Shown in pieces: positions 9,896 to 33,500 of a stretch of DNA of 40,199 nt. The notes under the pieces were generated by a model. It was not told the DNA's origin. It ran no database searches and was given only the letters and a program-made list of their open reading frames with translations. The DNA is from Macrostomum lignano (lineage: Eukaryota), in contig NIVC01004632.1 of assembly GCA_002269645.1 (NCBI GenBank), forward strand, positions 1-40,199. The letters are read 5' to 3'. Numbering within the stretch: position 1 is the first letter of the stretch; every line of letters begins with the position of its first letter. A program made the translations under genes and the position numbers.

Positions 9896-10384
9896 TCATT
9901 CACCATATGGCCTGGACCTTCAGCATGCCTAGGTTACCTGGAACTTAGAGAGAAAGTCCAAAGCAATTAGGGAATTGAATCTCTGTGAAAAGTCGCAAAA
10001 TTTATGACTTGGGACTGAATGGTCAATTAGTGAATCGTGACTCTGTAAAAAGATTTGATAAATTAAATAAGTTGGCTCATTGAACACCTGACTTGGAACA
10101 AACAAGTGGCAAAATATAATCCTAAATTTCCTAGTTCAGTTTAATGCAATTCGAATCTTGGGGGGGGATGCGGAGAAAAGACTGGAGGACATCTTTGGGA
10201 TTTTCTATCTGAACCATCTAATCTATCACAGGTGCTTCCAGCAGCTCAACATTTAGAGGAAAGTTAGGCCTTGGATTATTGTAAGAACTGCATGTATGAT
10301 GCTCAGATTTTGGGGAAATTTGAGTAGCCATGGTCCTCAGATAATATGTCAAATGTCAAGGACATGATATGGGACAAATGGACG

Positions 10385-11774: not shown

Positions 11775-12750
11775 CTTCTTTTCTCCCTCTCTTTATCTAC
11801 CTCTCCTTAACTCCCTCTCCTTATCTCCCTCTCCTTTTCTCCCTCTCTTTATCTCCCTCTCCTTATCTCCCTCTCCTTTTCTCCCTCTCCTTATCTCCCT
11901 CTCCTTATCTTCCTCTCCTTATCTCCCTCTCCTTATCTCCCTCTCCTTATCTCCCTCTCCTTATCTCCCTCTCCTCATCTACCTCTCCTTATCTCCCTCT
12001 CCTTATCTCCCTCTCCTTATCTCCCTCTCCTTATCTCCCTCTCCTTATCTCCCTCTCCTTATCTACATCTCTACTTATCTCCCTCTCCTTATTTCCCTCT
12101 CCTTATCTACCTCTCCTTATCTCCCTCTCCTCATCTACCTCTCCTTATCTCCCTCTTCTTATCCCCCTCTCCTCATCTACCTCTCCTTATCTACCTCTCT
12201 ACTTATCTATCTCTCCTCATGTACCTCTTCTTATCTCCCTCTCATTATCTACCTCTCCTTATCTCCCTCTCCTTATCTCCCTCTCCTTATCTCCCTCTCC
12301 TCATCTACCTCCCCTTATCTCCCTCTCCTTATTTAACCTCATTATCTCCTTCTCCTTATCTCCCTCTTCTTATCCCCCTCTCCTCATCTACCTCTCCTTA
12401 TCTCCCTCTTCTTATCCCCCTCTCCTCATCTACCTCTCCTTATCTACCTCTCTACTTATCTATCTCTCCTTATGTACCTCTTCTTATCTCCCTCTCATTA
12501 TCTAACTCTCCTTATCTCCCTCTCCTTATCTCCCTCTCCTTATCTCCCTCTCCTCATCTACCTCTCCTTATCCCCCTCTTCTTATCTCCTTCTCCTCATC
12601 TACCTCTCCTTATCTACCTCTCTACTTATCTATCTCTCCTTATGTACCTCTTCTTATCTCCCTCTCATTATCTACCTCTCCTTATCTACCTCTCCTCATC
12701 TACCACTCCTTATCTCCCTCTCCTTATCTACCTCTTCTTATCTCCCTCTG
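11775..12750. repeat. Polypyrimidine minisatellite, ~14 bp unit CTCTCCTTATCTCC
   Basis: About 1 kb of almost G-free sequence. Confidence 0.95.
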
Positions 12751-13253
12751 AGTCCACACTCTACCTATATTTTTTCTTTCCCTCGACTCCAAATCTCAAT
12801 TATTTTCTTCTGTCGCTTCCAATCCCAAACGCCCCGTCTGCCTGTCTTCAAGAGTCAATCAAGTCGCCTCGCCACTTCAACTCAGACGCCATCCAGCCTT
12901 CTTCATCAATCTCTCTTTTTTTTGAAAAGTTTCCTTCCACTAAGACTCTACCGCAAGCTCTGCGCCCTGGCAGTGACAGAGTTAAGTTGAGCCTCGCTTA
13001 AGTTAAGACAAGTGTTTAAATTAGTGAGAGCAAAATTTAAATGACAGACAGACGGACAAAAATCGGCAGAGTGCACTTTTATGTGTGTTTTTCATACCCA
13101 GTTGGAAAATTACACACAATCTTTAGTTGCTGGAGATAGCGAGTACAGTATATTATAAAAAATGCCATAATCTCCAAGTGTTCCACCTTATTATAATTAC
13201 TACTCACGTGGTCCTTGAGTGGAAGATCAGGAGCTCAGTGCATGGAAATCAAG

Positions 13254-13390
13254 GACCTATGGATAATTGGTCTGGAAGCCAGCCAGAGTCTACGATTTCT
13301 TTATCAGAATTCAATTTTGATTCGATGCGACGAATATCCGTTTCTTACCGACCTCAAGCTCATTTCTAAGAAAAACGTTGTCCATGGTTC
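13254..13390 (-). mobile_element. Degenerate copy of a small MITE-like dispersed repeat, related to 22732-22950
   Basis: The reverse complement shares CCATGGACAAC..TTAGAAATGAG..GTAAG.AACG.AT..TCG.ATCG..ATTGAATTC with the 22732 copy. Confidence 0.5.
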
Positions 13391-13668
13391 TTGAAAAAAT
13401 GGCTTCTAGTCCAAGTCTCTATAGAATTCTATGGTAAAAAGAATACAAGTATAAAGTATATTAAGCCTGGCTGACATCAGGCTTGTTGAAAAGGATAGAA
13501 AACATGTAGAAAAGGATACACTATAAGGATACGGACACTGCGTACGATTTTAAATAAGCATCGCACAGTATTGAGAGGGCGTCGAACTTCAAATTTGTGA
13601 AAATTACAATTGAAGGCCTAATCTGCAGTCTAGCGAGATAAAAGAATTCCAGTTTTTTAAGCTAAAGC

Positions 13669-14430
13669 TCCGTGTCTCACTCCGTGTCTCACTCCGTGTC
13701 TCACTCCGTGTCTCACTCCGTGTCTCACTCCGTGTCTCACTCCGTGTCTCACTCCGTGTCTCACTCCGTGTCTCACTCCGTGTCTCACTCCGTGTCTCAC
13801 TCCGTGTCTCACTCCGTGTCTCACTCCGTGTCTCACTCCGTGTCTCACTCCGTGTCTCACTCCGTGTCTCACTCCGTGTCTCACTCCGTGTCTCACTCCG
13901 TGTCTCACTCCGTGTCTCACTCCGTGTCTCACTCCGTGTCTCACTCCGTGTCTCACTCCGTGTCTCACTCCGTGTCTCACTCCGTGTCTCACTCCGTGTC
14001 TCACTCCGTGTCTCACTCCGTGTCTCACTCCGTGTCTCACTCCGTGTCTCACTCCGTGTCTCACTCCGTGTCTCACTCCGTGTCTCACTCCGTGTCTCAC
14101 TCCGTGTCTCACTCCGTGTCTCACTCCGTGTCTCACTCCGTGTCTCACTCCGTGTCTCACTCCGTGTCTCACTCCGTGTCTCACTCCGTGTCTCACTCCG
14201 TGTCTCACTCCGTGTCTCACTCCGTGTCTCACTCCGTGTCTCACTCCGTGTCTCACTCCGTGTCTCACTCCGTGTCTCACTCCGTGTCTCACTCCGTGTC
14301 TCACTCCGTGTCTCACTCCGTGTCTCACTCCGTGTCTCACTCCGTGTCTCACTCCGTGTCTCACTCCGTGTCTCACTCCGTGTCTCACTCCGTGTCTCAC
14401 TCCGTGTCTCACTCCGTGTCTCACTCCGTG
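13669..14430. repeat. Perfect 12 bp array (TCCGTGTCTCAC) x63
   Basis: No variant units seen; begins a few nt after the stop of the minus-strand gene. Confidence 0.98.
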
Positions 14431-14435
14431 CGCAG

Positions 14436-15311
14436 TCACTTGCACCAAACGCAGGCGCCCAGGCCGCCTCCGTTGCTGCCGCCGCCTCCGTTCGCCCGAC
14501 TAAACCGCCTCGAATCTCTCCGCCCCGACGCCGATCCCGCCGGCGCTGTTCGATCCTCGTCACCGCCATCATCGTCGCCATCGTCGAGACCATCGGCAGA
14601 CAGCGAGTCCAGTTCCAGACTATGCTGCACCGTCCAGTGCGCCACGCTGACAGCCGACTGCAGCTGCTCAACAAGCCCACGAGCCGAAGCGGTCTCGCGA
14701 CGGAGCTCCGCCAGAGCCTCCTCAACGTTGGTCGATGCAGCTTCCTCGACGGACGCTGCAGCGGTTGTCGAAGCGGCCGCCGACGAGGGACCCGAAGCGT
14801 CGGCGTCCGGATTGGCTAGCGACGCCCGCGACACGGAGCCGCGGCGTGACGATCTGAGGGAGCTGGCCCGGCTGCCGCCGCCAACGCTGCCGCCGCCGCC
14901 CAGCCCGAAGATGGACCTGCGGCCGGTGCGGAAGGCCTCGGTGACGCCTGTCAGCACCGGCGGCTGACCCGGCCGAGCTCTGGCCACCAGAGCGGCTGTC
15001 CGGTCGGCATTGTCTATGGCGGACTCGGCCGTCTGCACCAGGGTGGCGTAGCGGGCCTCCCAGTCCCGCCTGGCTGGGCTGCCATCGTCCGCAGTGTGCA
15101 GCATGACGGGCAGGATGGCATCGCGGGCGGTGTACAGCCCAGCTAGCAGGCGGTCCAGCAGCACCGATTGAAGCTCGTCGCGAAGTCGCCGACCGTCCAC
15201 CTGGGTGCCGAGCTGGCGAAGCAGCAGTTTGCACTGGGCGAGGCAGCGGTTCAACGAGCGGAGATCTGCGCTGAACTGCTCGACGGTGGCGATGGGGCTG
15301 ACGGAGGCCAT
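14436..15311 (-). CDS. RGS9BP: RGS9-binding protein (R9AP)/R7BP-like syntaxin-related RGS anchor, 291 aa, single coding exon
   Basis: N-terminal LRQLGTQVDGRRLRDELQS (syntaxin Habc-like), PPVLTGV, and LAELRRETASARGLVEQLQSAVSVAHWTVQ, versus recalled R9AP PLVRTGV and LRELEREVLQVGEMIDNMEMKVNVPRWTVQ. The ATG at 15311 follows an acceptor AG at 15337-15336. Confidence 0.75.
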   Translation of the reverse strand: MASVSPIATVEQFSADLRSLNRCLAQCKLLLRQLGTQVDGRRLRDELQSVLLDRLLAGLYTARDAILPVMLHTADDGSPARRDWEARYATLVQTAESAIDNADRTAALVARARPGQPPVLTGVTEAFRTGRRSIFGLGGGGSVGGGSRASSLRSSRRGSVSRASLANPDADASGPSSAAASTTAAASVEEAASTNVEEALAELRRETASARGLVEQLQSAVSVAHWTVQHSLELDSLSADGLDDGDDDGGDEDRTAPAGSASGRRDSRRFSRANGGGGSNGGGLGACVWCK

Positions 15312-15574
15312 GGGAGCGGCTCCGGCTGACTCTGGCTGCAATATCGTTAATTATTGTTAATTAAGCTTAAAATCAACATTGAGTGCGAAAAAAGCAACGC
15401 GTTTCAACTCACTAGGGCCGTCGTCAGGGTATACGAGCTATTCTATCGATCAGACACAAAACAGTCCAATGTGTCAAATACAAAGAGGGGAAGGAACGAA
15501 AGTATGGAAGAGCATTAAAAGTGAGGGAGCATGAAGGAGGGAAATCTAAAATGTACACACAACAAAAGGCCCGA

Positions 15575-15890
15575 TCCGATGTATGCCTGTGTAGTTCCTG
15601 GGCCGCGTTTGATGAAGAGATGAGCAGCTTGACTAGGATTTTCAGCATGAACGGATGCCCTAAAGATCTCATTAGTCGTTTGATTAGCAAGTTTGTTACT
15701 GATAGTCACTGGCAGGGTGCATAAGAATCATGGCGAAAGGCCGAATGACCCTGTGATGGTCTTGCCTTTCTACGGTGTCCCTCCTAACCTGTTGAAAAAG
15801 AAACTTTGGAGATCTTTTCGAAAATGGTGCAACACTGCGATTAGGATTTGTTTTCACACAGTCAAGGTTGGTCAATTTGTCAGCAAACTC
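15575..15890 (+). mobile_element. Penelope-like retroelement fragment (RT thumb/linker, frameshifted)
   Basis: LCSSWAAFDEEMSSLTRIFSMNGCPKDLISRLISKF followed by VMVLPFYG..KKKLW..IRICFHTVKVGQF resembles the PLE region C-terminal to the RT core. Confidence 0.7.
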
Positions 15891-15999
15891 GCCGCTTTTA
15901 ATGCTCTGGTCTTTAAGCTATGTTCACCTAGTGGGTTTTTTCGCTGTCAATGTTGACTTTAAGCTTGTCCTCACTTTGGCGACAAATACAGAATCTGGA

Positions 16000-16300
16000 T
16001 GTTTGTCTCCATGGCAACAACAATCTCAATATGCTTGTCTACATGGAAACAAGATTTTCAATATGCTTGTCTCCATGGCATAAACAATCCCAATATGCTT
16101 GTCTCCATGGCAAAAACAATCTCATTATGCTTGTTTCTATGGCAACAACAATCTCAATATGCTTGTCTCCATGGCATAAACAATCCCAATATGCTTGTCT
16201 CCATGGCAAAAACAATCTCATTATGCCTGTTTCTATGGCAACAACAATCTCAATATGCTTGTAGCAATGGCAATAACTGTCTTAAAGTTTCCATGCAAAC
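16000..16300. repeat. 32 bp minisatellite ATGCTTGTCTCCATGGCAACAACAATCTCAAT whose unit contains an RFX X-box
   Basis: About 9-10 copies in the putative first intron of the R9AP-like gene. Confidence 0.9.
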
Positions 16301-16381
16301 TAAATGTTTTTGTTCACACGCATGCAAACAATTATTAATATTGTGTTTATGCTACTAAAAAAATTATCTAAGTAAACTTAC

Positions 16382-16520
16382 GCTGCCGCTTTTTAACTGA
16401 AAATTCAACTTGTCAGGTCACGCAGACCAAAGCCCAGTTGGGATTTGGCTGGCTTCGGGTCTGAGAGAAATCGGGGAAGAAAGCCAAGCGCCGTCTCGTA
16501 GATAAAGTAAAGCGCCTTAG
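16382..16520 (-). other. Putative non-coding first exon of the R9AP-like gene (5' end approximate)
   Basis: Minus-strand donor GGCAGC|GTAAGT at 16381-16376, just downstream of the X-box; no in-frame ATG. Confidence 0.45.
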
Positions 16521-16541
16521 TCTGCTCCCCAAGCTCTGCTA

Positions 16542-16555
16542 GTTGCCATGACAAC
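16542..16555. promoter_or_regulatory. RFX X-box GTTGCCATGACAAC
   Basis: Exact match to the consensus GTHNYYATRRNAAC in unique GC-rich sequence upstream of the R9AP-like gene. Confidence 0.65.
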
Positions 16556-16948
16556 GCTTTCTTCTCGCCCTATTCGAAGGCCGAATGGCCAAATCGCCTG
16601 CGGGGAGAAAAAAGGGGAGAGGGGAAACAGCAGCGCCAGGCAGGCAGGTGAGAGAAAGTGCATCCTGCGTGGTATTTGATTAGCAGCACAGATATTCTGC
16701 GGCTGACTGACTCTCCGTCTCTTCGCACTTCCTCAGCCCAGCTTCCCCTGTGGAATTGGCTTGTCATCGCTCAGAGTCGAAATTTGAGGAACTTCTGTCT
16801 TAAAAAAACTGACATTTGTCTGAACTCTTGAGATCAAGGATGGAGCAATGTAGTGTTGCAAGCACTTTGGAAACTGTTCATTCCTGTTGATTGATTTTTA
16901 GTCAGGCCGAAAAACTAGACAGGGGAAATCAGTCAATAACCAGGAAGG

Positions 16949-17123
<175 letters not shown>

Positions 17124-17426
17124 TTTCTACCGTGGCGCACAATGAATTAAGAACACCAAGTAAAATTATTATGTTTGCCATACTGGTCTTTAAGCTAAAT
17201 TCAAGAACTACATTTAAAGTAAAACTTATTTGATTTATCTGAATATTGCTTTATGTTATTTGTATAGCATTTTGGTTCAATGTCCAGCAGTTTTTAATAA
17301 AAAAACTGATGCGAGTATTTGAATGGGAAGTATAGCTTTAGGTCTAACATTGAAATAAGACCATAGATAAATACTAGGGAAATAAGTAGAGCAGTAGGCA
17401 CTGATATCCAACGAACTACTCTAATA

Positions 17427-19352
17427 TAGCTTTTTGCAGCCCATTTGGGCTTACACGCATTGAATTTAATCCAAGATATATTTGCTAAAGCAATTGAGCT
17501 GTTGTCTATGGTCGCAAGGTCTGACACTGCAGCATTTAATTTGGTCTAATAAGCATCAATTTGGGCTATAGCGGCTGTGAAACCCAATAACGAGTTACAG
17601 CTGTGTAATGCAATTTATTTGAGGAAACGTCACTGTACCAACACCAGGAAACGTAAAAAATGGAAATCTGATCAGCTCTAACAAGAACAAAAAGAGCATT
17701 TTAGCATGGTCAAGACTCCGCTGAGGAAGATGAAAAAAACGTGTTCAATTGAAATTTTCTCCTGCAATGCAAGCTGGCACGAAGCGCAGCATCTGCCGGT
17801 ACCAACCTGCACACTTTAAAGGTGTGATAGCGGCTGTAGCGGCCTCGGCAATGCGGTGAAGTACCAGTACTCTCCATTGACCAAGGGTGGTGTCAGGAGG
17901 CGGCTGATCAAGCTCTCGTTGGGTGGCCGGGTCACTGAGCTCCCGGTGGCAGTGGAGAGTGGAGAGAGTGGATAGTGGAGAGTATGGTGGCAACTGGATG
18001 AGTTGGATCCTGTCCTGATATACTTCCGGAATCCGGGCTCCATTATGAAACCGCGCACCATCCATAATGATGCGAACCTGTTGTTGGGCATCCAGTCCAT
18101 GAACTTCGAGTAGAGACTGCACCAGTTCATTGATGCACTGCTGAAACAGATCTCCGGTCATAGTCTGGCTCACAACTTTGTGGCAGACAAGTCCAATGGA
18201 TGGTGAAATCGCTTGCAGTACATTCACTTGATGGCCTCGCTGAGAATGAACGGTGCGCCGTACACGCTGACCGCGGCGACCACAACCTTGCGTCCTCCGA
18301 GTCCAAATGTTGAATCCAGTCTCGTCCAGATACATTAGATGAACCTCAAGAGCCGTTAGCCATTCGGCAAACTCCCGCCTTCTCGCAACCGTCTGCGGGC
18401 TGTTGCGTACCACTGGAATGTCTGCGTCTCTACCAAGAATTTTCAGTGTTATCAGTCGCTTTTCCAGAGCTCTGCTGATAGTCGAAATGCTGACAACCAA
18501 GTGAAACTGTTCGTCCAACTTCTGCTTCATTTGCTGCAACGTCAACAGAGGGTTTGTCTCAATTGCATCAAGTAGCAGTTGGACCTGAGGCTCTTGCAAC
18601 TTGCTTTGGCGATTGCCGCCCCTTCGTAGACGATCTCTTCTGCCAGTGGTTTCTACGCGCTGACGGATGCTGTACACTGTCTTTTCTTTGACGTTCAGCA
18701 TCCTATCAATGTCCTTTGGGTGCTCACCTCTGTCGAGTGCTTCGATCACAAGCCCATGGCGTTCGTTCGACAGTCTAGCATACGGTCCACGATTCTGAGG
18801 CAGATCTTGCTCCTCCTCCGCAGTAACAAATGAAGCATTGTATAGCAATTTGACGATCATTATTTGTAGTTTTTATGCGTTACAATTCATTGTTTGTTTG
18901 CCATTCGGCATTGAACCTAGTCTTGTCTATGGTAATCCTCAATGCTAATGTCGTCAAATAGGCTAGAGAGAAGGGTATGAATACACTCTACCATAGCATA
19001 CGATTTGATCGTCCAATAGCGATACAATGAAAAGAATCAGCGGTCCCAGTGCGTGACAACGATTTGTCTATGGCTCGCGCCTACCGGCGCTCGCCAGACA
19101 ATCGTTGTCACGCACTGGGACCGCTGATTATTTATCCATTGCTTCCATCATCACTGCTTGTATCGGTCATGGCTAAATTAAAATCTAGGGTTGAAACTAT
19201 AGAGCCGCTATGGACCAAATTGATGCTTATTAGACCAAATTAAATGCTGCAGTGTCAGTCCTTGCGACCATAGACAACAGATCAATTGCTTTAGCAAATA
19301 TATCTTGGATTAAATTCTATGCGTGTAAGCCCAAATGGGCTGCAAAAAGCTA
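17427..19352 (-). mobile_element. Nested ITm (IS630/Tc1/mariner) transposon with ~150 bp TIRs and TA target duplication
   Basis: 17427-17575 and ~19203-19352 are near-identical inverted repeats (TAGCTTTTTGCAGCCCATTTGGG...); TA at 17425-26 and 19353-54. Confidence 0.92.
17745..18860 (-). CDS. IS630/Tc1-like DDE transposase, 371 aa, apparently lacking the third catalytic residue
   Basis: HTH-like N-terminus, YLDETGFN, IIMDGARFHN, LPPYSP; the usual NPIE motif after PYSP is absent. Confidence 0.88.
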   Translation of the reverse strand: MIVKLLYNASFVTAEEEQDLPQNRGPYARLSNERHGLVIEALDRGEHPKDIDRMLNVKEKTVYSIRQRVETTGRRDRLRRGGNRQSKLQEPQVQLLLDAIETNPLLTLQQMKQKLDEQFHLVVSISTISRALEKRLITLKILGRDADIPVVRNSPQTVARRREFAEWLTALEVHLMYLDETGFNIWTRRTQGCGRRGQRVRRTVHSQRGHQVNVLQAISPSIGLVCHKVVSQTMTGDLFQQCINELVQSLLEVHGLDAQQQVRIIMDGARFHNGARIPEVYQDRIQLIQLPPYSPLSTLSTLHCHRELSDPATQRELDQPPPDTTLGQWRVLVLHRIAEAATAAITPLKCAGWYRQMLRFVPACIAGENFN

Positions 19353-19354
19353 TA

Positions 19355-20372
19355 CTTCGTAGCATGGTCTTTTGACTTAACCACAGCATTGCACCGCCTA
19401 GGCATGCTGTCCACCAGCTTCTGGCACACTTCTGCCAGCTCACGAGTCCTCAATGATACATTGATACAGTACAGCTGATCAAGGGAAGCTGGCTGCTGCT
19501 TCTGGATGTCTCACTCGACCCAGTTCCACAGATTCTCGATCGTATTGAGGTCTGGTGACTGTGCTGACCAGTCCATGGTACGGATGTTGTTCTCAGCAAG
19601 ACATGCCTTCACAAACTTGGAGATGTGCTTCGGGATCGTTGTCCTGCTGAAACTGGCAGCTGTGCACTGCACCCAGTGGCAGCGCATCTGCTGCCTCTGG
19701 TAGGTGGCTGCTGAGGATGTCACGGTACTTCTGACTGTCCATGATGCCCTCAATGCGAGTTATTGGCCCAGGTCCAGCACTGGAGAATGCAGCCCACACC
19801 ATGACATTGCCACCTCCATGCTTCATGGTACCAAAGGTGCACCTGGGATCGAATTCCTCACCAGCTCGGCGGCGCACATACTGGCGGCCATCAGAATCAG
19901 TGCGGGAAAATTTGCTCTCGTCACTCCAGATGACCTTGGCCCAGTCCTGGGGGTGTCCAGCTTGCATGCTGCTTCGCCCAGTTCAAGCGCTGCTTCCGGT
20001 TTTTGTCGGAGATAAATGGCTTCTTCCTAGCAATGCGGCCGTGCAGTCCGGCAGCTACCAAACCGTGGCGGAAAGTCATGGGGTGCAGCTGGACACCAAA
20101 AGTTCACGGCTGATGTCCACAGCGGTGAGCCGACGGTTGGACTCGGGCATTCGCACGATGCGGCGATCCAGTCGGAGGTCAGCTTTCGGTGCCCTGCCAG
20201 GTCTTGGGGCACAGCCTGTGCTGCCAGTGCTGCTGAAACGCCTGTGTGCTTGCTGGACGCAGGTTTTCAACTTCCTCAGCTGCGTGGCTATGGCACGCTG
20301 GGAAACTCCTTGGTCGAACAGGGCCTTGATTTTCCTACACGACTCAGGCGATAGAGCTCTGCCTTTCCCTAT
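19355..20372 (-). pseudogene. Tc1 transposase pseudogene of the outer element
   Basis: (ATA)GKGRALS..RPGRAPK..ARKKPFIS..VIWSDESKF..KHGGGNVMVWAAF..FQQDNDP..SPDLNTIENLW..SMPRRC..TKY; start codon mutated and several frameshifts. Confidence 0.92.
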
Positions 20373-20934
20373 TCTAGGAGAGTTCGAGATAATTTTTCTT
20401 TGAGTAATATTGAATTAGATGTTTTGGACTAACAGAATCAGCAGGGCCACTTTTAAGGCACCTTTTAGACCAATTAATTAAGTGGTCTTATTACTGTGTG
20501 ACTTATTAAATTCGAAAGTGAGACAAGGGACTACAATTAAACACACTCAATTGCGAGTAATTATCCAACACATCACTGATTTAATTAATTGATAACAGGG
20601 TTATCTATAGCTGAATAGATAAAAATGCTCCCACAATCTGTGTAGGATATGCAATCAAAATTTCGAATTAATTTTAGGTGGTCTTAATTCATTGTGCGCC
20701 ACTGTGTCTAAACATATTCCGCGGTAAAAAATTTTCAGGACCGCCGCTTACCTACCTACTGAAAGTAATATTTCTAAGGACTTGACTCGCAAAGCCATCA
20801 GTGGTTTTTCATGTTCCCTATGATAAATGTTGATGAAAGTATCACAAGAATGTTATTTGCTTTCCTCAGGGCGTTACACTCGCTACTTATAGGAATCAGG
20901 TTACAGAAGACAAAAAAGGAGACAAAAGTCATTC

Positions 20935-21222
<288 letters not shown>

Positions 21223-21311
21223 AGTTCAGCAGGACAATGTGGCACATGCAGTTCCGCTATCCAGTCAGGTTCCAGTGCTACGAAAGCGGTTACTGAGATT
21301 CCAAACCAGCG

Positions 21312-21557
21312 CAACTGGCAGCCCAGGTGAAGAGCATCCTCTCTGTAATTGCGTCTCTAACTGATCCACCCCCGTGTCTCTCAGGTGCATTTTCCTCGCT
21401 TTGAGTGCGTATTGGTGCTTCAGCTGCCACCTGAGTGCCCAGGTGGTATTGCTGCTATTCGTCGGTGAAAAAGATTTCAAAGGAAACCGCGTAGGCAGAT
21501 GAAAAGAGAACTACAGAAAAAAAATTCCAGCATCGTTTACATTTTGCACGCCACCTG
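21312..21557. promoter_or_regulatory. E-box cluster upstream of the neuropeptide gene
   Basis: CAGGTG/CACCTG at 21324, 21382, 21428, 21440, 21552, plus CAGCTG 21421, CAGATG 21496, CAACTG 21312. Confidence 0.55.
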
Positions 21558-21641
21558 AGACACCGCAAAATTTCTTTGATTTCTATAATACAGAACCGAT
21601 ACTAACAGAGCTGTGGTTCTAGGCCCTTTGATCTGCTTGTC

Positions 21642-21676
21642 TATAAAGGCAACAACTCGGAGCGAGAATTTCATTC
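21642..21676 (+). promoter_or_regulatory. TATA box plus initiator of the neuropeptide gene
   Basis: TATAAA at 21642-47 and TCATTC at 21671-76 (A 31 nt after the first T), 85 nt before the ATG. Confidence 0.7.
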
Positions 21677-21757
21677 GCCCAGACTCCCTACTCTCTCTTG
21701 TTGTCTTCTCAATAACTGGACAGAGTTTTTCTGTATCAACTGCAAATAGCACTCGAG

Positions 21758-22629
21758 ATGAGCAGCATTGGCTGGGCGTTCGCTCTGCTCTGTCTGGCAA
21801 CGGTGCTTTCGGCTCTGCCAGCTGGCCGCTATGAGAATCTGGAACTGACGGTGAGAGGTCCAAGATTAGTTTAACAATCGCCAAGATCAGTTTAACAATC
21901 GCCAAGATTAGTTTAACAATCGCGAAGATTGGTTTAACAATCGCCTAGATTAGTTTAACAATCGTGAAGATTAGTTTAACAATCGCCAAGATTAGTTTAA
22001 CAATCGCCTAGATCAGTTTAACAATCTCCAAGATTGGCTTGACAATCTCCAAGATTAGTTTAACAATCGCCTAGATTAGTTTAACAATCGCCTAGATTAG
22101 TTTAACAATCGCCTAGATTAGTTTAACAATCGCCTAGATTAGTTTAACAATCGTGAAGATTGGTTTAACAATCGCCAAGATTAGTTTAACAATCACCAAG
22201 ATTAGTTTAACAATCGCCTAGATTGAGTTTAACAATCACCAAGATTAGTTTAACAATCGCCTAGATTGAGTTTAACAATCGCCTAGATTGAGTTTAACAA
22301 TCGCCAAGAGTAGTTTAACAATCGCCTAGATTGAGTTTAACAATCGCCAAGATTAGTTTAACAGTCGTCAAGATTGGTTTAACAGTCTTTAAAACTAGTT
22401 TTGCAATGGTTTAGCAATTCTGTGATATTTTTTGCAATAATTTCAGCTGACCGACGTGAAGCACGAGCTGAAGTATGCCGAGGCTACTCATAACCTGCCA
22501 AAAGGAATCCTGCAGAAGTTGATCCCGTCAGTCGTGCTGACATCGACTGGCCTCGACAAGAGAGGCGGGCGTCGGTACAGCCTTTGCTGGGGGGTGTACC
22601 ACCCGGTGGCCTGCATCGGTGTACAGTAA
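21758..22629 (+). CDS. Secreted neuropeptide precursor, 91 aa, join(21758..21850,22447..22629); predicted cyclic peptide (GGRR)YSLCWGVYHPVACIGVQ
   Basis: Signal peptide MSSIGWAFALLCLATVLSA; phase-0 intron GTGAGA...TTTCAG; KR and RR convertase sites before a C-terminal two-Cys peptide. Confidence 0.88.
21860..22390. repeat. 21-22 bp minisatellite CAAGATTAGTTTAACAATCGC in the neuropeptide intron
   Basis: About 24 copies starting ~10 nt after the donor. Confidence 0.95.
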
Positions 22630-22731
22630 GCTGTACACTCATTTCGTCAAAAGACAATCGACAGCAGTTTAAGCTGTCTCGATTTAAAAAGAAACACTTT
22701 AACCCTTAAAATCCACAGGTATTTTAATATT

Positions 22732-22950: not shown

Positions 22951-23664
22951 GATCGGCTATTTTTAGAACTATTTAGAATAGAAAGCACTCTGGTCTCTGT
23001 CAGCCCAATACACGAGGTAATAAATATATAACTTTATATTAACACCTCCCTGCATAAACTTTATTCCAATCTATATTTGATTACCTGATTAATATAACCA
23101 AGAACAAAGTTCAGAGAAACTATGATAAGCTATCCTATACTATACCTGCACACAGAACTCGTAAAATATAAATATATATACTGAAGCAGTAGGTTCTCCT
23201 CTAACTGTTGTGATTTAGCAGTCCCAGGCATTCATAAATCAAAAAGCATCGTGACTGTGACGAGTTCGTTATTTCTGGCAGTTGATTAGATTATTGTTTT
23301 GTTTTATTCTTACCCTTGACGCCAAGGTCAAATCCGGTGACAATCATCGACAGTGACAGGCCAGATACGCAGCAAGCGCATACCATGAGTCTTAGTCAGG
23401 AACTACATGTAGTAGCAGTCTGTAGAGTTTGTAAATAATTTTTTTTAATAAACTGCATGTAGCTTTCGACCTTGTAACAGTGTCTATTGCCAGTTTTTTT
23501 AGGAAAACGATGCTTAAAATAAAAAAGCACCAAGCGCTGAAAGCCTGCTATCTAGCCTAAGACATCAGCACCCCTGTGAGCCTTGGCATCAAAACCTCCC
23601 TTTAAGGCTAAGCCATGGCTTAATACTAGCTTTTTATTTTATGCTTACCAGCAACTCCCAATCG

Positions 23665-26327: not shown

Positions 26328-27569
26328 AAACTGACAACGTCACAAACAAATACAGCATATAGCTCGTACTTTTGTTAATCTCTGGCTCACTAGATCGGGG
26401 TGGATAATTTTCAATGTCCGTGGGTGAAGCAGTAATTTTGGTGAGGCCGGGGTGAGCCTTAGCCATAAGTGGCAAGATCCCTAGGATCCCCGAATTCCTG
26501 GAGTGTCTCACTGGCAAGGCACACTATTTCTGGGGCTCAAGCTGCTGCAACCGTCAAAAACAGCAAGAGGCCTGATCAGGTGGTCGTTTGCCAGCTCCTT
26601 CACGGGTTAAGTTCACCTAGCGCAATAATGGCAGCTCAAAGCAGCACAGAGAGCGCGGTACTCTTCCTTAAATACGGGCAGCTCACCAGCGATACAAAAT
26701 CGTCGGCAAGAAGTCTCAGGCCGCACCACAACCCTCCGAGCCGAGTACGCCTTCGGTGACAATCTCATCAGAGACCTTGTTTACGTCAGAATCGAATCAT
26801 ACTATAGCTTATCAAATCTTATCTGGAATTGTGTTCGACTTTGTTACTCATTCTCTTGTACCGTACCTGTGACTATTGGATAAGTTTTGGTTGGACTCGC
26901 CGGTGATAGGCAAATAGGAATCAACCGTTTTAAAACATCCGAATCGCTCCAGTATTTGTCTTGGGCGTGACTATTTGGCCGTATATACATGTATATTACA
27001 CCGTGGAACTGGATTGTGCGAAAGTTTCAAAAAAGGACGCTTGAGCTTTTTACAATGTTAATGCTCTCACACTCTTACTGCTCATAAATCACAGCCATCC
27101 TCGATTCCAATAAACAGAAAAGTAGCATTAATTAAGCTTTTTGAGCAATATTTTAAAGCTCCAACTTCCCGGCGATTCCTACTTGTATATGTGCTGCATA
27201 ACAAAGTCTTCTTTAAATATTCAAGAAAGTTTTTCTCAAGTTTTTCGTTAAGATAATCAACACATGTTTAAAAAACAAACAATAGTTTAATTAAGTTGTT
27301 TTGAAATGTTTTTCACAATTTCAATTTTCTATTTTCAATGAAACGAGACTTTTAGAAAGCAGTTAATCTTTCAGAAAAAACAGGATTGATTGTGACTATG
27401 TTAGTGATTACACTGTGTGTTACATTTCCATTTCATAAAATAGTTGAATCTAATCAATTAAATTTATCTCGTGGTTGCTAGATTCCCTTTTACAGACTAA
27501 TCGGACTTAGAGAAAGTTTCTAATCACTATTTGATTGTTTTAAAACGTTTCTAGTGACTGTCTGGTATA

Positions 27570-30500
27570 ATGTCGTATTCACAGCTGAGCCAGGATGTTA
27601 CTGAACGTTATTCAAATGTCTCCAATTTTTTTCGCAGTGGTCACATAGAAGACATTGACAAAATTGGTAAGCAGGAAAGCTAGAAGCTTTAAAGTATTGC
27701 TATTTTCATCAATAAATTTAAACAACAAATAAATATAGTCTAGACTCAACAAATATTTTTGCAATAATTAATTTTTGATAGTATTTGACTGGTTTATTTA
27801 GCAGTTAATTTGTCAATAATAAAATTTAAAATGATAATATAAATCCAAAGCTATGCTATAGCTATGGTTTATATTTTGTCAGTTGTTATTGTTATAGCAA
27901 AAAAAAGTATTGAAAGAATATAGTTATAAAAATCTATAAAAATGTTGTTTCAATGAATGTTTTTCATTGATATATTTTCAAAAATTTTTTTAATACATAT
28001 GTTTGACAAACTAGTCATATGCATATCTTTAAAAAGTTATTTCAAAAGTTCATAACTATTAGTATACTTCATCATTTATAGTATACTTATATTTTTTAAG
28101 CAGAAAATTTTCTCTGCTTTCACATATTGTGATTTTTTTCCTTTCATATATAATTTTATCTTTTTATTTATAGAAAAAAACAACACATTCATTTTTCATC
28201 TTATCCATTTTTTGGCTTATAGTATAACCATTTTTGCTTATAGTATTGTTATTATAGTAACTTTATATAAAAATTCACAATGGTTATTTTTATAGTCAAC
28301 ACCTAAAATATATATATATATACTTGTGGTGTCAATCATAAGACTCTAAGAGACTATAAATATAGTAATAAGAGATATCAAAACTTGTTTTTAATGCATT
28401 GATACTAAGTTAACTTTCTTGTCATCAACCATAGCTTATAACTAAATGCTTAGTATAATGAAATTTTCCTAATAAATATAAAAAAGCCATTCAGCTTTTT
28501 TTATTTAGTGACTATAAAAATAACAATTTTGATATTTATATAGTTTTGTTAAGTTAATCACTTCAGCTCAGATAGTATTCATTGTGTTAACCATAAAAAT
28601 AGCAATTTCACTATTTACATGGTCACCGTAACAATAACAAAAATCTTATATTTTATTGGGATTTAATATTTTGTAAGATTTAGAAGCAGTTTTTTTCTTT
28701 AAGCTTAAAACAATCAGGGTCAAATAAAATAATTTTAGTATGCTAAAGTAGGCATATTTTAGGCATATTTTAAATGCCTTTAAACAAAGAACCTATTATG
28801 GTGTTATAATTGATATTTTTTGAATATTTATTATTAATATTACTAAAAATTATCTATCTGTAAATCAACTAATATATAAACAGTGGTTTGTATAGCAATT
28901 ATATTCAGCACTTTTTCTGCTCACTTCTATCCATTTTATTATACAGGTATGTATGCAGCCACTAGTCAGCTACAGCAAAGGGCCAATGAGGTTCGGGCTA
29001 ACAGGGTGAATTGGCAATCATATTTGCAGTAAGTGAATTTCTATGACTTTGTTTTTTGTATGGTTTATTAATTCTCTTTTAACATATTGGGAGCAAGAAA
29101 GTTTTAATTATATAGGAGTAATTGCAATAGGGACTCATCTTATTAGTAGTTTAGTTGATATTTAGACATTTTTTTATTAATGAAAAAGACAATGAGATGT
29201 AGATCTAAGGTAGAGAGAGATAAAGGGTAAATTAATCAGATTCAGTTAGATGAAGGGAGAGTCAATGAGATGCAGGGAGTGAATGAGATGCAGGGAGAGT
29301 CAATGAGATGCAGGGAGAGTCAATGAGATGCAAGGAGAGTCAATGAGATGCAGGGAGAGTCAATGAGATTCAGGGAGAGTCAATGAGATGCAAGGAGAGT
29401 CAATGAGATGCAGGGAGAGTCAATGAGATGCAAGGAGAGTCAATGAGATGCAGGGAGAGTCAATGAGATGCAGGGAGAGTCAATGAGATGCAGGGAGAGT
29501 CAATGAGATGCAGGGAGAGTCAATGAGATGCAGGGAGAGTCAATGAGATGCAAGGAGAGTCAATGAGATGCAAGGAGAGTCAATGAGATGCAGGGAGAGT
29601 CAATGAGATGCAAAGAGAGTCAATGAGATGCAAAGAGAGTCAATGAGATGCAGGGAGAGTCAATGAGATGCAGGGAGAGTCAATGAGATGCAAGGAGAGT
29701 CAATGAGATGCAGGGAGAGTCAATGAGATGCAGGGAGAGTCAATGAGATGCAGGGAGAGTCAATGAGATGCAGGGAGAGTCAATGAGATGCAGGGAGTGA
29801 ATGAGATGCAGGGAGAGTCAATGAGATGCAGGGAGAGTCAATGAGATGCAAGGAGAGTCAATGAGATGCAAGGAGAGTCAATGAGATGCAGGGAGAGTCA
29901 ATGAGATGCAAGGAGAGTCAATGAGATGCAGGGAGAGTCAATGAGATGCAGGGAGAGTCAATGAGATGCAAGGAGAGTCAATGAGATGCAGGGAGAGTCA
30001 ATGAGATGCAGGGAGAGTCAATGAGATGCAAGGAGAGTCAATGAGATGCAGGGAGAGTCAATGAGATGCAAGGAGAGTCAATGAGATGCAAGGAGAGTCA
30101 ATGAGATGCAAGGAGAGTCAATGAGATGCAAGGAGAGTCAATGAGATGCAGGGAGAGTCAATGAGATGCAGGGAGAGTCAATGAGATGCAAGGAGAGTCA
30201 ATGAGATGCAGGGAGAGTCAATGAGATGCAGGGAGAGTCAATGAGATGCAGGGAGAGTCAATGAGATGCAGGGAGAGTCAATGAGATGCAAGGAGAGTCA
30301 ATGAGATGCAGGGAGAGTCAATGAGATGCAGGGAGAGTCAATGAGATGCAGGGAGAGTCAATGAGATGCAGGGAGAGTCAATGAGATGCAAGGAGAGTCA
30401 ATGAGATGCAGGGAGAGTCAATGAGATGCAGGGAGACACAGCCAGAGTAACTCAACCCCACATGCGCAGAGGCCAAATGATAGACCAGGCTGACTATGAC

Positions 30501-33500
30501 TTCATCGTGAAGCTGGAGTCCCGGGCCAGTCAACCGGAGCAGCGCAAGGCTCTGATAGACGAGAATTCCAGTCAGTTTGTTCGAACGATACTCGCCCTGC
30601 TGGCTAGAATCTCCAAGGAGCAGACTGTGCAGTACATCCTAACTCTGCTCGATGACCTGCTGCAGGAGGAAAAGCAACGCGTCGAGCTGTTCAAAGCTTA
30701 TTCCCAGCGACGCAGAGAGAGCGTATGGGCGCCGTTCTTTGGTATGCTGCACAGGCAGGATGGCTTCATTGTCAATCAGGCATCGAGAATCATCGCCAAA
30801 ATTGCCTGCTGGGGTAACCAGCTGATGGAGCACACTGAGCTGCTGCATTACCTGTCCTGGCTCAGGGAGCAGCTGCGACTGCCTGTAGGATTTTTAATTG
30901 TCTTCTCCGATGCTGTGTCTTCCCTATGATCCCAGTGTCTTCCTTATGATCCCAGAGTCTTCCTTATGATCCCAGTGTCTTCCTTATGATCCCAGTGTCT
31001 TCCTTATGATCCCAGAGTCTTCCTGGTGATCCCAGTGTCTTCCTTATGATCCCAGTGTCTTCCTTATGATCCCAGTGTCTTCCTTATGAACCCAGTGTCT
31101 TCCTTATGATCCCAGTGTCTTCCTTATGATCCAGAGTCTTCCTTATGATCCCAGTGTCTTCCTTATGATCCCAGTGTCTTCCTTATGATCCCAGTGTCTT
31201 CCTTATGATCCCAGAGTCTTCCTGGTGATCCCAGTGTCTTCCTTATGATCCCAGTGTCTTCCTTATGATCCCAGTGTCTTCCTTATGAACCCAGTGTCTT
31301 CCTTATGATCCCAGTGTCTTCCTTATGATCCCAGAGTCTTCTTATGATCCCAGTGTCTTCCTTATGATCCCAGTGTCTTCCTTATGATCCCAATGTTCCC
31401 TGTGATCTCAGTGTCTTCCTTATGATCCCAGAGTCTTCCTTATGATCCCAGTGTCTTCCTTATGATCCCAGTGTCTTCTTATGATCCCAGTGTCTTCCTT
31501 ATGATCCCAGTGTCTTCCTTATGATCCCAGTGTCTTCCTTATGATCCCAGTGTCTTCCTTAAGATCAGTGTCTTCCTTATGATCCCAGTGTCTTCCTTAT
31601 GATCCCAGAGTCTTCCCTATGATCCCAGTGTCTTCCTTATGATCCCAGTCTTCCCCACGATCCCGGTGTCTTCCCTATGATCCCAGTGTCTTCCCTATGA
31701 TCCCAGTCTTCCCCACGATCCCGGTGTCTTCCCCATGATCCCAGAGTCTTCCCCGTGATCCCAGTGTCTTTCACACGAGCATCATGAAGCCCATATGCAA
31801 TCCATATTATTCCAATGTCTCCCTGGCCTCACAGTGCTCTCTCTTGCTAACAACACCTTGCCGCTTTGAAATCCCCTCCGTAGTCGAACGAGTACATCCA
31901 AACAGTGGCCCGCTGCCTGCAAATGATGCTCAGAGTTGGGCCCTACAGACAGGCATTCTGCGACATTGACGGCATTGCCACCTTGGCCAGCGTTCTGTCA
32001 ACTAAGGTCAACTATCAGATCCAGTACCAGCTGGTGTTCTGCCTGTGGTGCCTCAGCTTCGATGCTGATATTGTTATGCGAATGAAGAAGTGAGTTTTAT
32101 TTATTCTGCAGTTTGCGGAAGAGTAGCGTTAGTTCTATTGGCGCTAAAGTCACGTATACGCTAAACTTGGCGCCACGATCTGTGTCTGCCAGTGGCACCG
32201 AATTTCGTGTGTGGATGGCGCCAAATTCAGTATGATAACGGCGCCAAATTTAGTATGTTGATGGCACCAGATTCAGTATGATAACGGCGCCAAATTCAGT
32301 ATGTTGATGGCGCCAAATTCAGTATGATAACGGCGCCAAATTTAGTATGTTGATGGCACCAGATTCAGTATGATAATAACGGCGCCAAATTCGTTATGTT
32401 GACGGCGCCAAATTCAGTATGATAACGGCGCCAAATTCAGTATGTTGATGGCGCCAAATTCAGTATTTTGATTGCGCCAAATTCGATATGTCAGTGGCGC
32501 CAAATTCAGTGTTTTGATTGCGCCAAATTCGATATGTCAGTGGCGCCAAATTCAGTATTTTGATTGAGCCAAATTCGATATGTCAGTGGCGCCAAATTCA
32601 GTATTTTGATTGCGCCAAATTCGATGTCAGTGGCGCCAAATTCAGTATGTTGATGGCGCCAAATTCAGTATGTTGATGGCGCCAAATTCAGTATGTTGAT
32701 GGCGCCAAATTCGGTATGATAATTTTTACATTGATAAGACGATAATTCGTCTATATCAACGTTTCCAGTATATTTTAGTTAAAATATAAACAAAATGAAT
32801 AAATATTCCTGCCGCCTACTGTTAGTAGCTGATAGCTCTCGTATATCAAGAGTAGCCGCTCTCTCTCCCGCGCAGGTACAATCTGATCCCAATCTGCGCG
32901 GACGTTCTGTGCGAATCCGAGAAAGAGAAAGTTAATCGCATTGTGTGCGCCTTCTTTCGGCACCTGCTTGAGAAGCCAACTGACTCAATGATGGTTAGGG
33001 AGAGCGCGCCCATGGTGCACTGCAAAGTGCTTAAACAGGTGCGAATGAGTATGATTTATTGCTTATCAACTGGGTGCTGGCATGTCAATTTTTTGCTAGA
33101 AAGTTACCCTCCATCCTGTAAGCTGTCAGTTCAGACTGTCACCCTCCATCCTGTAAGCTGTCAGTTCAGACTGTCACCCTCCATCCTGTAAGCTGTCAGT
33201 TCAGACTGTCACCCTCCATCCTGTCATCTGTCAGTTCAGACTGTCACCCTCCATCCTGTCATCTGTCAATTCAGACTGTCACCCTCCATCCTGTCATCTG
33301 TCAGTTCAGACTGTCACCCTCCATCCTGAAAGCTGTCAGTTCAGACTGTCACCCTCCATCCTGAAAGCTGTCAGTTCAGACTGTCACCCTCCATCCTGTA
33401 AGCTGTCAGTTCAGACTGTCACCCTCCATCCTGAAAGCTGTCAGTTCAGACTGTCACCCTCCATCCTGTAAGCTGTCAGTTCAGACTGTCACCCTCCATC

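What the first reader, a model, noticed from the sequence alone, without database searches (positions are those of the whole stretch)
21758..22629. Unannotated neuropeptide precursor with a C-x8-C ring bridging allatostatin-C, MCH and elevenin motifs
Seen: signal peptide, spacer, KR-GG-RR, then YSLCWGVYHPVACIGVQ at the extreme C-terminus, with no amidation Gly. It is absent from the ORF track because it is split by a repeat-filled intron. Recalled comparisons: AstC RYRQC--YFNPISCF aligns to RYSLCWGVYHPVACI with a 2-residue ring insertion and the same C-terminal precursor position. MCH (CMLGRVYRPC) has the same 8-residue ring and a VYxP motif. Elevenin (CxxFVFHPxCRGV) has the same ring size and C-x-G-V tail but normally sits near the signal peptide. 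Inference: a divergent or new member of the somatostatin/AstC/MCH-related peptides, possibly defining an undescribed ligand-GPCR system.
Basis: partly seen in the sequence, partly recalled or inferred. Interest (0 to 1): 0.88.

Follow-up and report, generated by a model that had tools for sequence, protein, structure and literature searches.

The report
Orphan cysteine-loop propeptide gene, Macrostomum
This is a real two-exon gene of the flatworm Macrostomum lignano for a 91-residue secreted precursor that most likely releases a 17-residue disulfide-looped peptide from its C-terminus, but it is already in UniProt as an uncharacterised "Secreted protein" and its claimed kinship to allatostatin-C, MCH and elevenin does not hold up statistically.

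Summary
Exon 1 (21758-21850), a 596-nt phase-0 GT-AG intron filled with a 21-bp tandem repeat, and exon 2 (22447-22629) encode a 91-aa protein. It has a hydrophobic signal sequence, a spacer, KR-GG-RR, then YSLCWGVYHPVACIGVQ and a stop.

The window is Macrostomum lignano. The gene is not unannotated: UniProt holds gene models with this exact splice junction, A0A1I8GGZ1 (identical over all 91 aa) and A0A1I8HWD5 (93 % paralogue). Both are named only "Secreted protein".

Between paralogues all six amino-acid changes lie in the signal peptide or spacer. The processing site and the 17-mer carry only silent changes. Exon GC and GC3 match neighbouring real exons.

No homologue was found outside M. 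lignano in 1.84 billion representative proteins.

Family tests fail:
- Elevenin, in register: -6.8 bits against 15.7-34.4 for true members.
- AstC: ring of 8 instead of 6, and 2-5 bits against 12.7-28.5.
- MCH: both conserved ring residues are absent.
- Cestode npp-41: no profile similarity.

My verdict is a plausible orphan neuropeptide or peptide-hormone precursor with the generic somatostatin/AstC/MCH-style layout. Its family is undetermined. Expression and processing are untested. Interest is moderate.

The parts
21642..21647 (+). TATAAA, a candidate TATA box about 111 nt upstream of the ATG
   Evidence: Read directly from the sequence. Function is inferred, not tested.
21758..21850 (+). 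Coding exon 1, codons 1-31. It holds the signal peptide (about residues 1-19 to 1-23, MSSIGWAFALLCLATVLSALPAG) and the start of the propeptide.
   Evidence: Kyte-Doolittle 9-residue mean is 2.2-2.5 over residues 4-18. UniProt names both gene models 'Secreted protein'. The junction is the same as in P0001 and P0002.
21851..22446 (+). Phase-0 GT-AG intron of 596 nt
   Evidence: Donor GTGAGA and acceptor TTTCAG. Stops in all three frames. GC 0.34.
21860..22384 (.). 21-bp tandem repeat, 24.8 copies, unit CCAAGATTAGTTTAACAATCG, filling the intron
   Evidence: Arrays like this cover 39 % of the window, so the repeat is ordinary for this genome.
22447..22557 (+). Exon 2, first part: the rest of the propeptide or spacer (residues 32-68)
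   Evidence: Five of the six amino-acid differences from the paralogue fall in residues 26-68.
22558..22575 (+). Processing site K69-R70-G71-G72-R73-R74, two dibasic convertase sites
   Evidence: Invariant between paralogues. Cleavage is inferred from the general rule for prohormone convertases.
22576..22626 (+). Predicted mature peptide YSLCWGVYHPVACIGVQ, 17 aa. Cys78 is at 22585-22587 and Cys87 at 22612-22614, giving an 8-residue ring.
   Evidence: Identical in the paralogue, with at least 2 silent differences (CTT>CTG at Leu77, GTA>GTG at Val90) deduced from out-of-frame stretches of P0003. Oxidised monoisotopic mass is 1891.875 Da.
22627..22629 (+). TAA stop codon of the 91-aa form. It overlaps a GTAAG donor-like site.
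22626..22718 (+). Candidate second intron (CA|GTAAGC ... CCACAG|G), used by gene model A0A1I8GGZ1. It removes the stop and adds YFNIVTMDN (through 22749).
   Evidence: P0002 equals the window product plus YFNIVTMDN, with coordinates worked out. The added segment is AT-rich, and the paralogue model P0001 ends at Q91, so the 91-aa form is favoured. This is unresolved without transcripts.
23019..23024 (+). First AATAAA downstream of the stop, a candidate poly(A) signal implying a 3' UTR of about 400 nt
   Evidence: Inferred only.

Best explanation
This is a small stand-alone Macrostomum lignano gene with two coding exons. It encodes a 91-aa prepropeptide.

The proposed mechanism has four steps:
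1. The N-terminal signal sequence directs the protein into the secretory pathway.
2. Prohormone-convertase-type cleavage at KR(69-70) and RR(73-74), followed by carboxypeptidase trimming, frees the C-terminal 17-mer YSLCWGVYHPVACIGVQ.
3. Cys78 and Cys87 form an intramolecular disulfide, closing an 8-residue ring. The C-terminus stays a free acid.
4. The cyclic, hydrophobic, uncharged peptide is the active product. It is most likely a neuropeptide or peptide hormone acting on a rhodopsin-type GPCR.

The layout (signal, spacer with one phase-0 intron, dibasic site, Cys-loop peptide at the very C-terminus) is that of somatostatin/AstC/MCH-type precursors. The peptide cannot be assigned to any of these families or to elevenin. 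It is at present an orphan known only from M. lignano.

Shown here: the gene structure, coding signature, secretory signal, dibasic sites, Cys spacing and the conservation pattern between paralogues.

Inferred: cleavage, the disulfide, neuronal or endocrine expression, and receptor type.
For: - Gene structure and translation.
- Independent gene models with the same junction: A0A1I8GGZ1 is identical over 91 aa, and A0A1I8HWD5 is 93 % identical.
- A syntenic paralogous locus exists. P0003 joins the same SPT exon, 100 % identical, to a P0001-like copy.
- Conservation pattern: the six amino-acid differences (W6L, E26K, T31M, T33G, A42V, D68N) all lie outside KRGGRR and the 17-mer. At least 2 silent differences lie inside the 17-mer and at least 6 in the gene overall.
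- Coding signature: exon GC 0.58-0.59 and GC3 0.71, against 0.34 for the intron.
- A strongly hydrophobic N-terminus, and the source name 'Secreted protein'.
- Precursors of the same size and layout are accepted neuropeptide precursors elsewhere. Examples are ArMCHP, 88 aa with a C-terminal Cys-loop peptide after a dibasic site (PMC4772807), and cestode npp-41, 85 aa ending KR-FFCNPYGCI.
Against: - No transcript, expression, peptidomic or receptor data could be reached with these tools.
- No homologue outside M. lignano was found in 1.84 billion representative proteins or in metagenome pattern scans. Conservation therefore rests on recent paralogues, and the numbers are small. Zero of 6 replacements falling in the last 23 residues has P of about 0.17 by position alone (my calculation), and 2 silent against 0 replacement changes in the 17-mer has P of about 0.06 (my calculation).
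- No Pfam family matches.
- A second gene model splices out the stop and adds nine residues, so the true C-terminus is uncertain.
- Small secreted Cys-containing peptides can also be gland, seminal-fluid or defence products.
Confidence: 0.55

Rival explanations
1. It is a divergent member of the allatostatin-C/somatostatin-type superfamily, a flatworm AstC-type peptide whose ring has grown from 6 to 8 residues and which signals through an AstC/SST-like (rhodopsin gamma) receptor.
For: - The precursor layout and the single phase-0 proregion intron are as described for spiralian AstC genes (PMC9048919).
- The C-terminal half, Y-H-P-V-A-C-I, lines up position for position with arthropod F-N-P-I-S-C-F and Aplysia N-V-V-A-C-Y (sequences).
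- The first ring residue is aromatic and there is a [FY]xP motif, both noted as AstC traits.
- Cestode npp-41 (KR-FFCNPYGCI) shares P-x-x-C-I, and one UniRef entry for it is named 'Allatostatin C'.
Against: - The ring is 8 residues, whereas protostome AstC rings are stated to be always 6.
- The common ring Asn is absent.
- After the best deletion of two ring residues the profile score is 2.3-4.9 bits, against 12.7-28.5 for true AstCs, and 5 % of Cys-fixed shuffles do as well.
- hhalign against the npp-41 family aligns only PVAC/PYGC, probability 0.3 %.
Confidence: 0.12
2. It is a divergent elevenin (L11-type peptide) that has moved to the C-terminus of its precursor.
For: - It has the same 8-residue ring and the same C-x-G-V tail. 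Gly at Cys2+2 is invariant in elevenins and is the residue most critical for receptor activation, and bivalve elevenins have C-L-G-V.
- VYHP resembles the V-F-H-P / P-Y-H-P core.
- The gapped HMM score is exceeded by only 0.9 % of shuffles.
Against: - In register the PSSM gives -6.8 bits, against 15.7-34.4 for true members, with 18.6 % of shuffles as good or better.
- The HMM hit is 4.3 bits and covers 5 residues.
- Arg at Cys2+1, Pro at Cys2-2 and Asp/Asn before Cys1 are all missing.
- Elevenin sits directly after the signal peptide. The one elevenin gene described has two phase-2 introns, whereas this gene has one phase-0 intron and a C-terminal peptide.
Confidence: 0.05
3. It is a protostome melanin-concentrating-hormone-type peptide.
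For: - It has an 8-residue ring, as in vertebrate MCH.
- The peptide lies at the extreme C-terminus after a dibasic site, is not amidated, and the precursor is about 90 aa like starfish ArMCHP.
- There is a loose G-(x)-V-Y-x-P resemblance to human MCH (recalled from memory, not a test).
Against: - The two conserved ring features given for MCH-type peptides are not met: Met/Ile after Cys1 (here Trp), and Lys/Arg two before Cys2 (here Val).
- The VYxP motif is out of register with both Cys.
- MCH is so far known only from deuterostomes.
Confidence: 0.03
4. It is a secreted product of non-neural cells, such as a gland, seminal-fluid, adhesive or defence/toxin-like peptide. It uses furin-type processing and has no dedicated GPCR.
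For: - The only secure facts are a signal peptide, dibasic sites and two Cys.
- The gene is lineage-restricted and its spacer evolves fast, as is common for reproductive and defence secretions.
- There is no amidation signal and no repeated peptide copies.
Against: - The peptide is uncharged and hydrophobic (pI 6.7, GRAVY 0.84), which is unlike cationic antimicrobial peptides.
- A single short Cys-loop peptide at the C-terminus behind a dibasic site, with a conserved peptide and a variable spacer, is the classical neuropeptide pattern.
Confidence: 0.2
5. It is a spurious or decaying gene model with no functional product.
For: The gene models are computational. One database model of the paralogous locus (P0003) is chimeric and frameshifted twice.
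Against: - Clean splice sites and an open frame.
- Exon-specific GC and GC3.
- An intact paralogue with only silent changes in the peptide.
- The frameshifts in P0003 are single-base events of the kind produced by assembly errors, and P0001 shows the same allele intact.
Confidence: 0.05

Closest known systems
Allatostatin-C / somatostatin-type precursors (including spiralian AstC)
   Same: Signal peptide, a spacer with a single phase-0 intron, a dibasic site, and one non-amidated disulfide-loop peptide at the extreme C-terminus. The first ring residue is aromatic. There is a [FY]-x-P motif, and the pattern P-x-x-C-hydrophobic matches arthropod AstC.
   Different: The ring is 8 residues, not 6 (10 in SS). 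There is no ring Asn and no FWK/WK core. The profile score lies far below that of true members.
Elevenin (Aplysia L11 peptide family)
   Same: C-x8-C ring, invariant Gly at Cys2+2, Val at Cys2+3, a V-[FY]-[HA]-P-like core, no amidation, and 17-20 aa length.
   Different: The core motif is shifted by one residue. Arg at Cys2+1, Pro at Cys2-2 and Asp/Asn before Cys1 are missing. The peptide is at the C-terminus rather than directly after the signal peptide. The intron is phase 0, against two phase-2 introns in the one described elevenin gene.
Melanin-concentrating hormone-type precursors (vertebrates, echinoderms, hemichordates)
   Same: A precursor of about 90 aa, a C-terminal Cys-loop peptide after a dibasic site, an 8-residue ring as in vertebrates, and a free C-terminus.
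   Different: It lacks Met/Ile after Cys1 and the basic residue two before Cys2. MCH is known only from deuterostomes.
Cestode npp-41 (KR-FFCNPYGCI; one UniRef entry is named 'Allatostatin C')
   Same: It is a flatworm peptide in an 85-aa precursor with an intron in the proregion. A KR site is followed by a short non-amidated Cys-loop peptide at the C-terminus ending in C-I, with Pro three residues before Cys2.
   Different: The ring is 4 residues, not 8. There is no detectable precursor similarity (hhalign probability 0.3 %), and no npp-41-like hit from M. lignano.

Membership tests
Generic neuropeptide/peptide-hormone precursor | N-terminal signal peptide | tested here: met
   Hydrophobic core over residues 4-18, Kyte-Doolittle mean 2.2-2.5. 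UniProt names both models 'Secreted protein'. SignalP was not available.
Generic neuropeptide/peptide-hormone precursor | Dibasic convertase sites flanking the peptide | tested here: met
   K69-R70 and R73-R74 lie directly before the 17-mer and are invariant in the paralogue. Actual cleavage was not tested.
Generic neuropeptide/peptide-hormone precursor | Peptide more conserved than spacer | tested here: inconclusive
   There are 0 replacements and at least 2 silent changes in the 17-mer, against 5 replacements in the spacer. This rests on paralogues within one species and on small numbers.
Generic neuropeptide/peptide-hormone precursor | Expression in neurons or endocrine cells, and a detectable mature peptide | not testable with these tools
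   No transcriptome, in situ or peptidomic data for M. lignano could be reached.
Allatostatin-C | Six residues between the two Cys (stated to be invariant in protostomes) | tested here: not met
   There are eight residues here. The rule comes from PMC9048919 and PMC8786951.
Allatostatin-C | Sequence profile of the mature peptide (ring Asn, aliphatic or aromatic first ring residue, aromatic after Cys2) | tested here: not met
   Best score is 2.3-4.9 bits after deleting two ring residues, against 12.7-28.5 for true AstCs in leave-one-out. 5 % of shuffles do as well. Asn is absent, and Ile rather than F/Y/W follows Cys2.
Allatostatin-C | [quoted passage not shown] | tested here: met
   PMC9048919 states that this feature does not distinguish between families.
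Elevenin | Two Cys separated by 8 residues | tested here: met
   with the rule.
Elevenin | Conserved residues: Gly at Cys2+2, Arg at Cys2+1, Pro at Cys2-2, Asp/Asn before Cys1, aromatic at ring position 5 | tested here: not met
   Only Gly (and Val at Cys2+3) match. The in-register PSSM gives -6.8 bits, against 15.7-34.4 for true members. The gapped HMM gives 4.3 bits over 5 residues.
Elevenin | Peptide directly follows the signal peptide; gene with phase-2 introns | tested here: not met
   The peptide is at the extreme C-terminus, and the gene has one phase-0 intron. The gene-structure reference is a single cone-snail gene.
Elevenin | Activates elevenin-clade GPCRs | not testable with these tools
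   Needs receptor cloning and an assay.
Melanin-concentrating hormone type | Met/Ile after Cys1 and Lys/Arg two residues before Cys2 | tested here: not met
   Trp follows Cys1, and Val sits two before Cys2 (against PMC4772807).
Melanin-concentrating hormone type | Cys-loop peptide at the C-terminus of a short precursor after a dibasic site | tested here: met
   This is a generic feature shared with SS/AstC types.
Flatworm npp-41 | Detectable precursor or peptide homology to the FFCNPYGCI family | tested here: not met
   hhalign probability 0.3 %, with only PVAC/PYGC aligned. The search with npp-41 returned cestodes only.

The most novel reading that the evidence does not exclude
The 17-mer is the founding member of an undescribed flatworm cysteine-loop neuropeptide family with its own GPCR. 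It might represent a basal-flatworm (macrostomorph) state of the AstC/somatostatin-type lineage with an expanded 8-residue ring. That would link canonical 6-residue AstC to the 4-residue-ring cestode npp-41.
Probability: 0.15. Interest if true: 0.6.

Novelty: new member of a known kind. Interest (0 to 1): 0.38.

Why it matters
Flatworm neuropeptidomes are dominated by short amidated peptides. Disulfide-loop peptides are rare among them, and somatostatin/AstC-, elevenin- and MCH-type ligands have not been firmly established in the phylum. Macrostomum lignano is an early-branching, transgenic-capable flatworm model.

A validated Cys-loop peptide with a receptor there would add a data point for how these ligand families evolved in Spiralia. 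It would also give a tractable signalling system for functional work.

As it stands, the gene is an uncharacterised, species-restricted "Secreted protein". The value of the finding is a concrete and easily testable candidate, with exact junction, peptide and mass. It is not evidence for a new evolutionary link.

Tried and rejected
1. Homologue searches.
   - The word-indexed search of 5.8 billion proteins gave only the M. lignano paralogue.
   - The exhaustive phmmer search of 1.84 billion representatives gave only M. lignano models plus three spurious repeat proteins.
   - A genome contigs pattern scan found nothing, and that collection is prokaryotic, so the scan was uninformative.
   - Two metagenome pattern scans gave 0 hits and then 6 hits. 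All six lie in unrelated reading contexts and are chance matches.
2. DNA of the paralogous loci could not be fetched, and the spliced product could not be looked up. A full dN/dS was therefore impossible. Silent differences were instead deduced from out-of-frame stretches of the chimeric model P0003.
3. Literature.
   - No paper in the library contains the peptide string.
   - The planarian prohormone supplements contain none of the motifs.
   - McVeigh 2009 is not held. Koziol 2016 is cited in the library but its text was not consulted.
   - No paper reports elevenin, AstC or MCH ligands in flatworms.
4. Pfam gave no family.
5. Rejected readings.
   - The 21-bp intronic repeat is not coding: it has stops in all frames.
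   - The minus-strand ORF 21537-21905 is the reverse of exon 1 plus repeat.
   - The repeat-filled intron is not special, because 39 % of the window is tandem repeat.
6. A receptor-complement test was not attempted. No reliable receptor query sequence was available, and the search tool cannot be filtered by taxon.

Full report
**Origin of the window.** The window is genomic DNA of the free-living flatworm Macrostomum lignano. The spliced product of the flagged region is 93 % identical to UniProt A0A1I8HWD5 (P0001, 91 aa). It is identical over its whole length to A0A1I8GGZ1 (P0002, 100 aa). About 39 % of the 40 kb lies in 26 tandem-repeat arrays, so a repeat-filled intron is ordinary in this genome.

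**Checking the observation.**
- The ATG at 21758 has G at -3 and an in-frame stop 13 codons upstream.
- It opens a 31-codon exon ending at 21850, with donor ACG|GTGAGA.
- The next 596 nt hold a 21-bp repeat of 24.8 copies and have stops in all three frames.
- The frame of the downstream coding block is closed two codons before 22447, just behind a TTTTTTGCAATAATTTCAG acceptor.
- Joining 21850 to 22447 (phase 0) gives MSSIGWAFALLCLATVLSALPAGRYENLELT|LTDVKHELKYAEATHNLPKGILQKLIPSVVLTSTGLDKRGGRRYSLCWGVYHPVACIGVQ*.

**Is it a real gene?** Four lines of evidence say yes.
1. Both UniProt models use exactly this junction.
2. Exon GC is 0.58-0.59 and GC3 is 0.71. This matches the neighbouring serine-palmitoyltransferase-like and V-ATPase-H exons (GC3 0.74 and 0.65). 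The intron is 0.34 and the flanks are 0.38-0.42.
3. A paralogous, syntenic locus exists. Database protein P0003 is a chimeric model that joins the same SPT exon (132/132 identical) to a P0001-like copy of the precursor, read partly out of frame.
4. The conservation pattern fits a prohormone.
   - The six amino-acid differences between the window and P0001 (W6L, E26K, T31M, T33G, A42V, D68N) all lie in the signal peptide or spacer.
   - The out-of-frame stretches of P0003 reveal silent differences at Gly5, Cys12, Ala14, Thr62, Leu77 and Val90. At least two silent and no replacement changes therefore fall in the 17-mer.
   - The numbers are small. By my own calculation P is roughly 0.06-0.17 depending on the test. 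The paralogues are also recent. This evidence is consistent with constraint but is not proof.

A TATAAA lies about 111 nt upstream of the ATG, and the first AATAAA lies about 390 nt after the stop. This fits a small autonomous gene.

**An unresolved detail at the 3' end.** The stop codon TAA overlaps a GTAAG donor-like site (CA|GTAAGC at 22626). Model A0A1I8GGZ1 splices from there to CCACAG|G at 22718/22719, which replaces the stop with YFNIVTMDN. The paralogue model ends at Gln91, and the added segment is AT-rich like non-coding sequence. I therefore favour the 91-aa form, but only transcripts can decide. The extension contains no basic site, so it would yield a 26-residue peptide.

**Relatives elsewhere.** None were found.
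- The exhaustive phmmer search of 1.84 billion representative proteins returned only the M. lignano models and three spurious repeat proteins.
- Pattern scans of metagenome contigs returned nothing, and then six chance matches.
- Pfam has no match.
- No paper in the library contains the peptide, and the planarian prohormone supplements lack its motifs.

**Testing the three proposed affinities against real family members.**

| Family | Reference set | Result for this peptide | True members | Shuffle control |
|---|---|---|---|---|
| Elevenin, in register | 38 peptides, PMC10175484 Suppl. Table 1 | -6.8 bits | 15.7-34.4 bits (leave-one-out) | 18.6 % of Cys-fixed shuffles as good |
| Elevenin, gapped HMM | same set (37 non-redundant) | 4.3 bits, aligning only VYHPV to PFAPr | not computed | 0.9 % as good |
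| AstC, two ring residues deleted | 16 peptides, PMC8786951 Suppl. Table 3 | 2.3-4.9 bits | 12.7-28.5 bits | 5 % as good |

- Elevenin. Of the residues shown to matter for receptor activation (Gly > Arg > Pro > Asp > Phe > Val > Ile), only Gly and Val are in place. Elevenins follow the signal peptide directly, and the one described gene has two phase-2 introns. Here the peptide is C-terminal and the intron is phase 0.
- AstC. Protostome AstC rings are reported to be always six residues. The best local resemblance is Y-H-P-V-A-C-I to arthropod F-N-P-I-S-C-F. The precursor layout and the phase-0 proregion intron do match AstC/SS-type genes, but the source paper itself says this feature does not discriminate between families.
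- MCH. The conserved Met/Ile after Cys1 and the basic residue two before Cys2 are both absent. MCH is so far restricted to deuterostomes.

With three families tried, nominal P values of 0.01-0.05 are not evidence of homology. The "bridge" is what one expects from short aromatic-Pro motifs inside hydrophobic Cys loops.

**Known flatworm peptides.** The only described flatworm precursor I found with a C-terminal, non-amidated Cys-loop peptide is cestode npp-41.
- It is an 85-aa precursor ending KR-FFCNPYGCI, invariant across Taeniidae. One UniRef entry for it is named "Allatostatin C".
- It shares P-x-x-C-I and the general layout with the Macrostomum gene.
- Its ring has four residues, and profile-profile comparison finds nothing beyond PVAC/PYGC (probability 0.3 %).
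- There is therefore no one-to-one orthology to a described flatworm peptide, and also no demonstrated link.

**Most likely mechanism.** The steps are signal-peptide removal, convertase cleavage at KR and RR, carboxypeptidase trimming, and oxidation of Cys78-Cys87 to an 8-residue ring.
- The product would be an uncharged, hydrophobic 17-mer with a free C-terminus (monoisotopic 1891.875 Da, pI 6.7, GRAVY 0.84).
- It would act as a neuropeptide or hormone, probably on a rhodopsin-type GPCR.
- The dependence of elevenin and AstC activity on the disulfide is the functional precedent.
- The processing, the disulfide, the cell type and the receptor are all inferred.
- The main rival is a non-neural secreted product, which sequence alone cannot exclude.

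**Verdict.** However, it is already a database gene model, and its proposed family links fail every specific membership test. Its support comes from one species only. I rate it a new, orphan member of a known kind (a small prohormone with a C-terminal Cys-loop peptide), of moderate interest.

Noticed in passing
window 1-40199 (for example 7909-9894, 13668-14430, 29248-30436): Twenty-six tandem-repeat arrays (periods 4-103 bp) cover about 39 % of the window. They include a 2-kb (TCTG)n tract and a perfect 12-bp array of 63.6 copies. Many generate long spurious ORFs in several frames.
   Followed up: partly
window 17745-18860 (-) and 19593-19967 (-): An intact 371-aa ORF with DDE_3 endonuclease and HTH_32/HTH_29 domains, which looks like a Tc1/mariner-type transposase. 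A second, 124-aa transposase-like fragment without a Pfam hit lies about 1 kb away.
   Followed up: partly
window 4045-4575 and 5491-6015 (+): Exons of an aminotransferase class I/II gene, serine-palmitoyltransferase-like by my reading. The second exon is 100 % identical to the N-terminus of database protein P0003.
   Followed up: partly
database protein P0003 (541 aa), corresponding to window about 5617-22660: A public gene model of the paralogous locus is chimeric. It fuses the SPT exon, pieces of low-complexity ORFs and the precursor gene across about 16 kb. It reads the precursor with two frameshifts, which are probably assembly indels.
   Followed up: partly
window 30426-30929 (+): An exon encoding the N-terminal domain of V-ATPase subunit H (Pfam E = 9e-33), flanked on both sides by 20-bp tandem arrays.
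   Followed up: no
window 39012-39545 (+): An ORF whose C-terminal part (GEGAYKRVYRGYDREQGRPIAWCELK) looks like the start of a WNK-type protein kinase domain. Pfam gave no significant hit on this fragment.
   Followed up: no
window 27001-29000: A sharply AT-rich stretch (GC 0.24-0.28), against 0.40-0.65 in the rest of the window.
   Followed up: no
proteins P0008-P0011 (Taeniidae npp-41 family): Cestode npp-41 precursors end in an invariant KR-FFCNPYGCI, a 4-residue Cys ring. One UniRef entry is named 'Allatostatin C'. P0011 looks like an intron-retention product that marks an intron in the proregion.
   Followed up: partly
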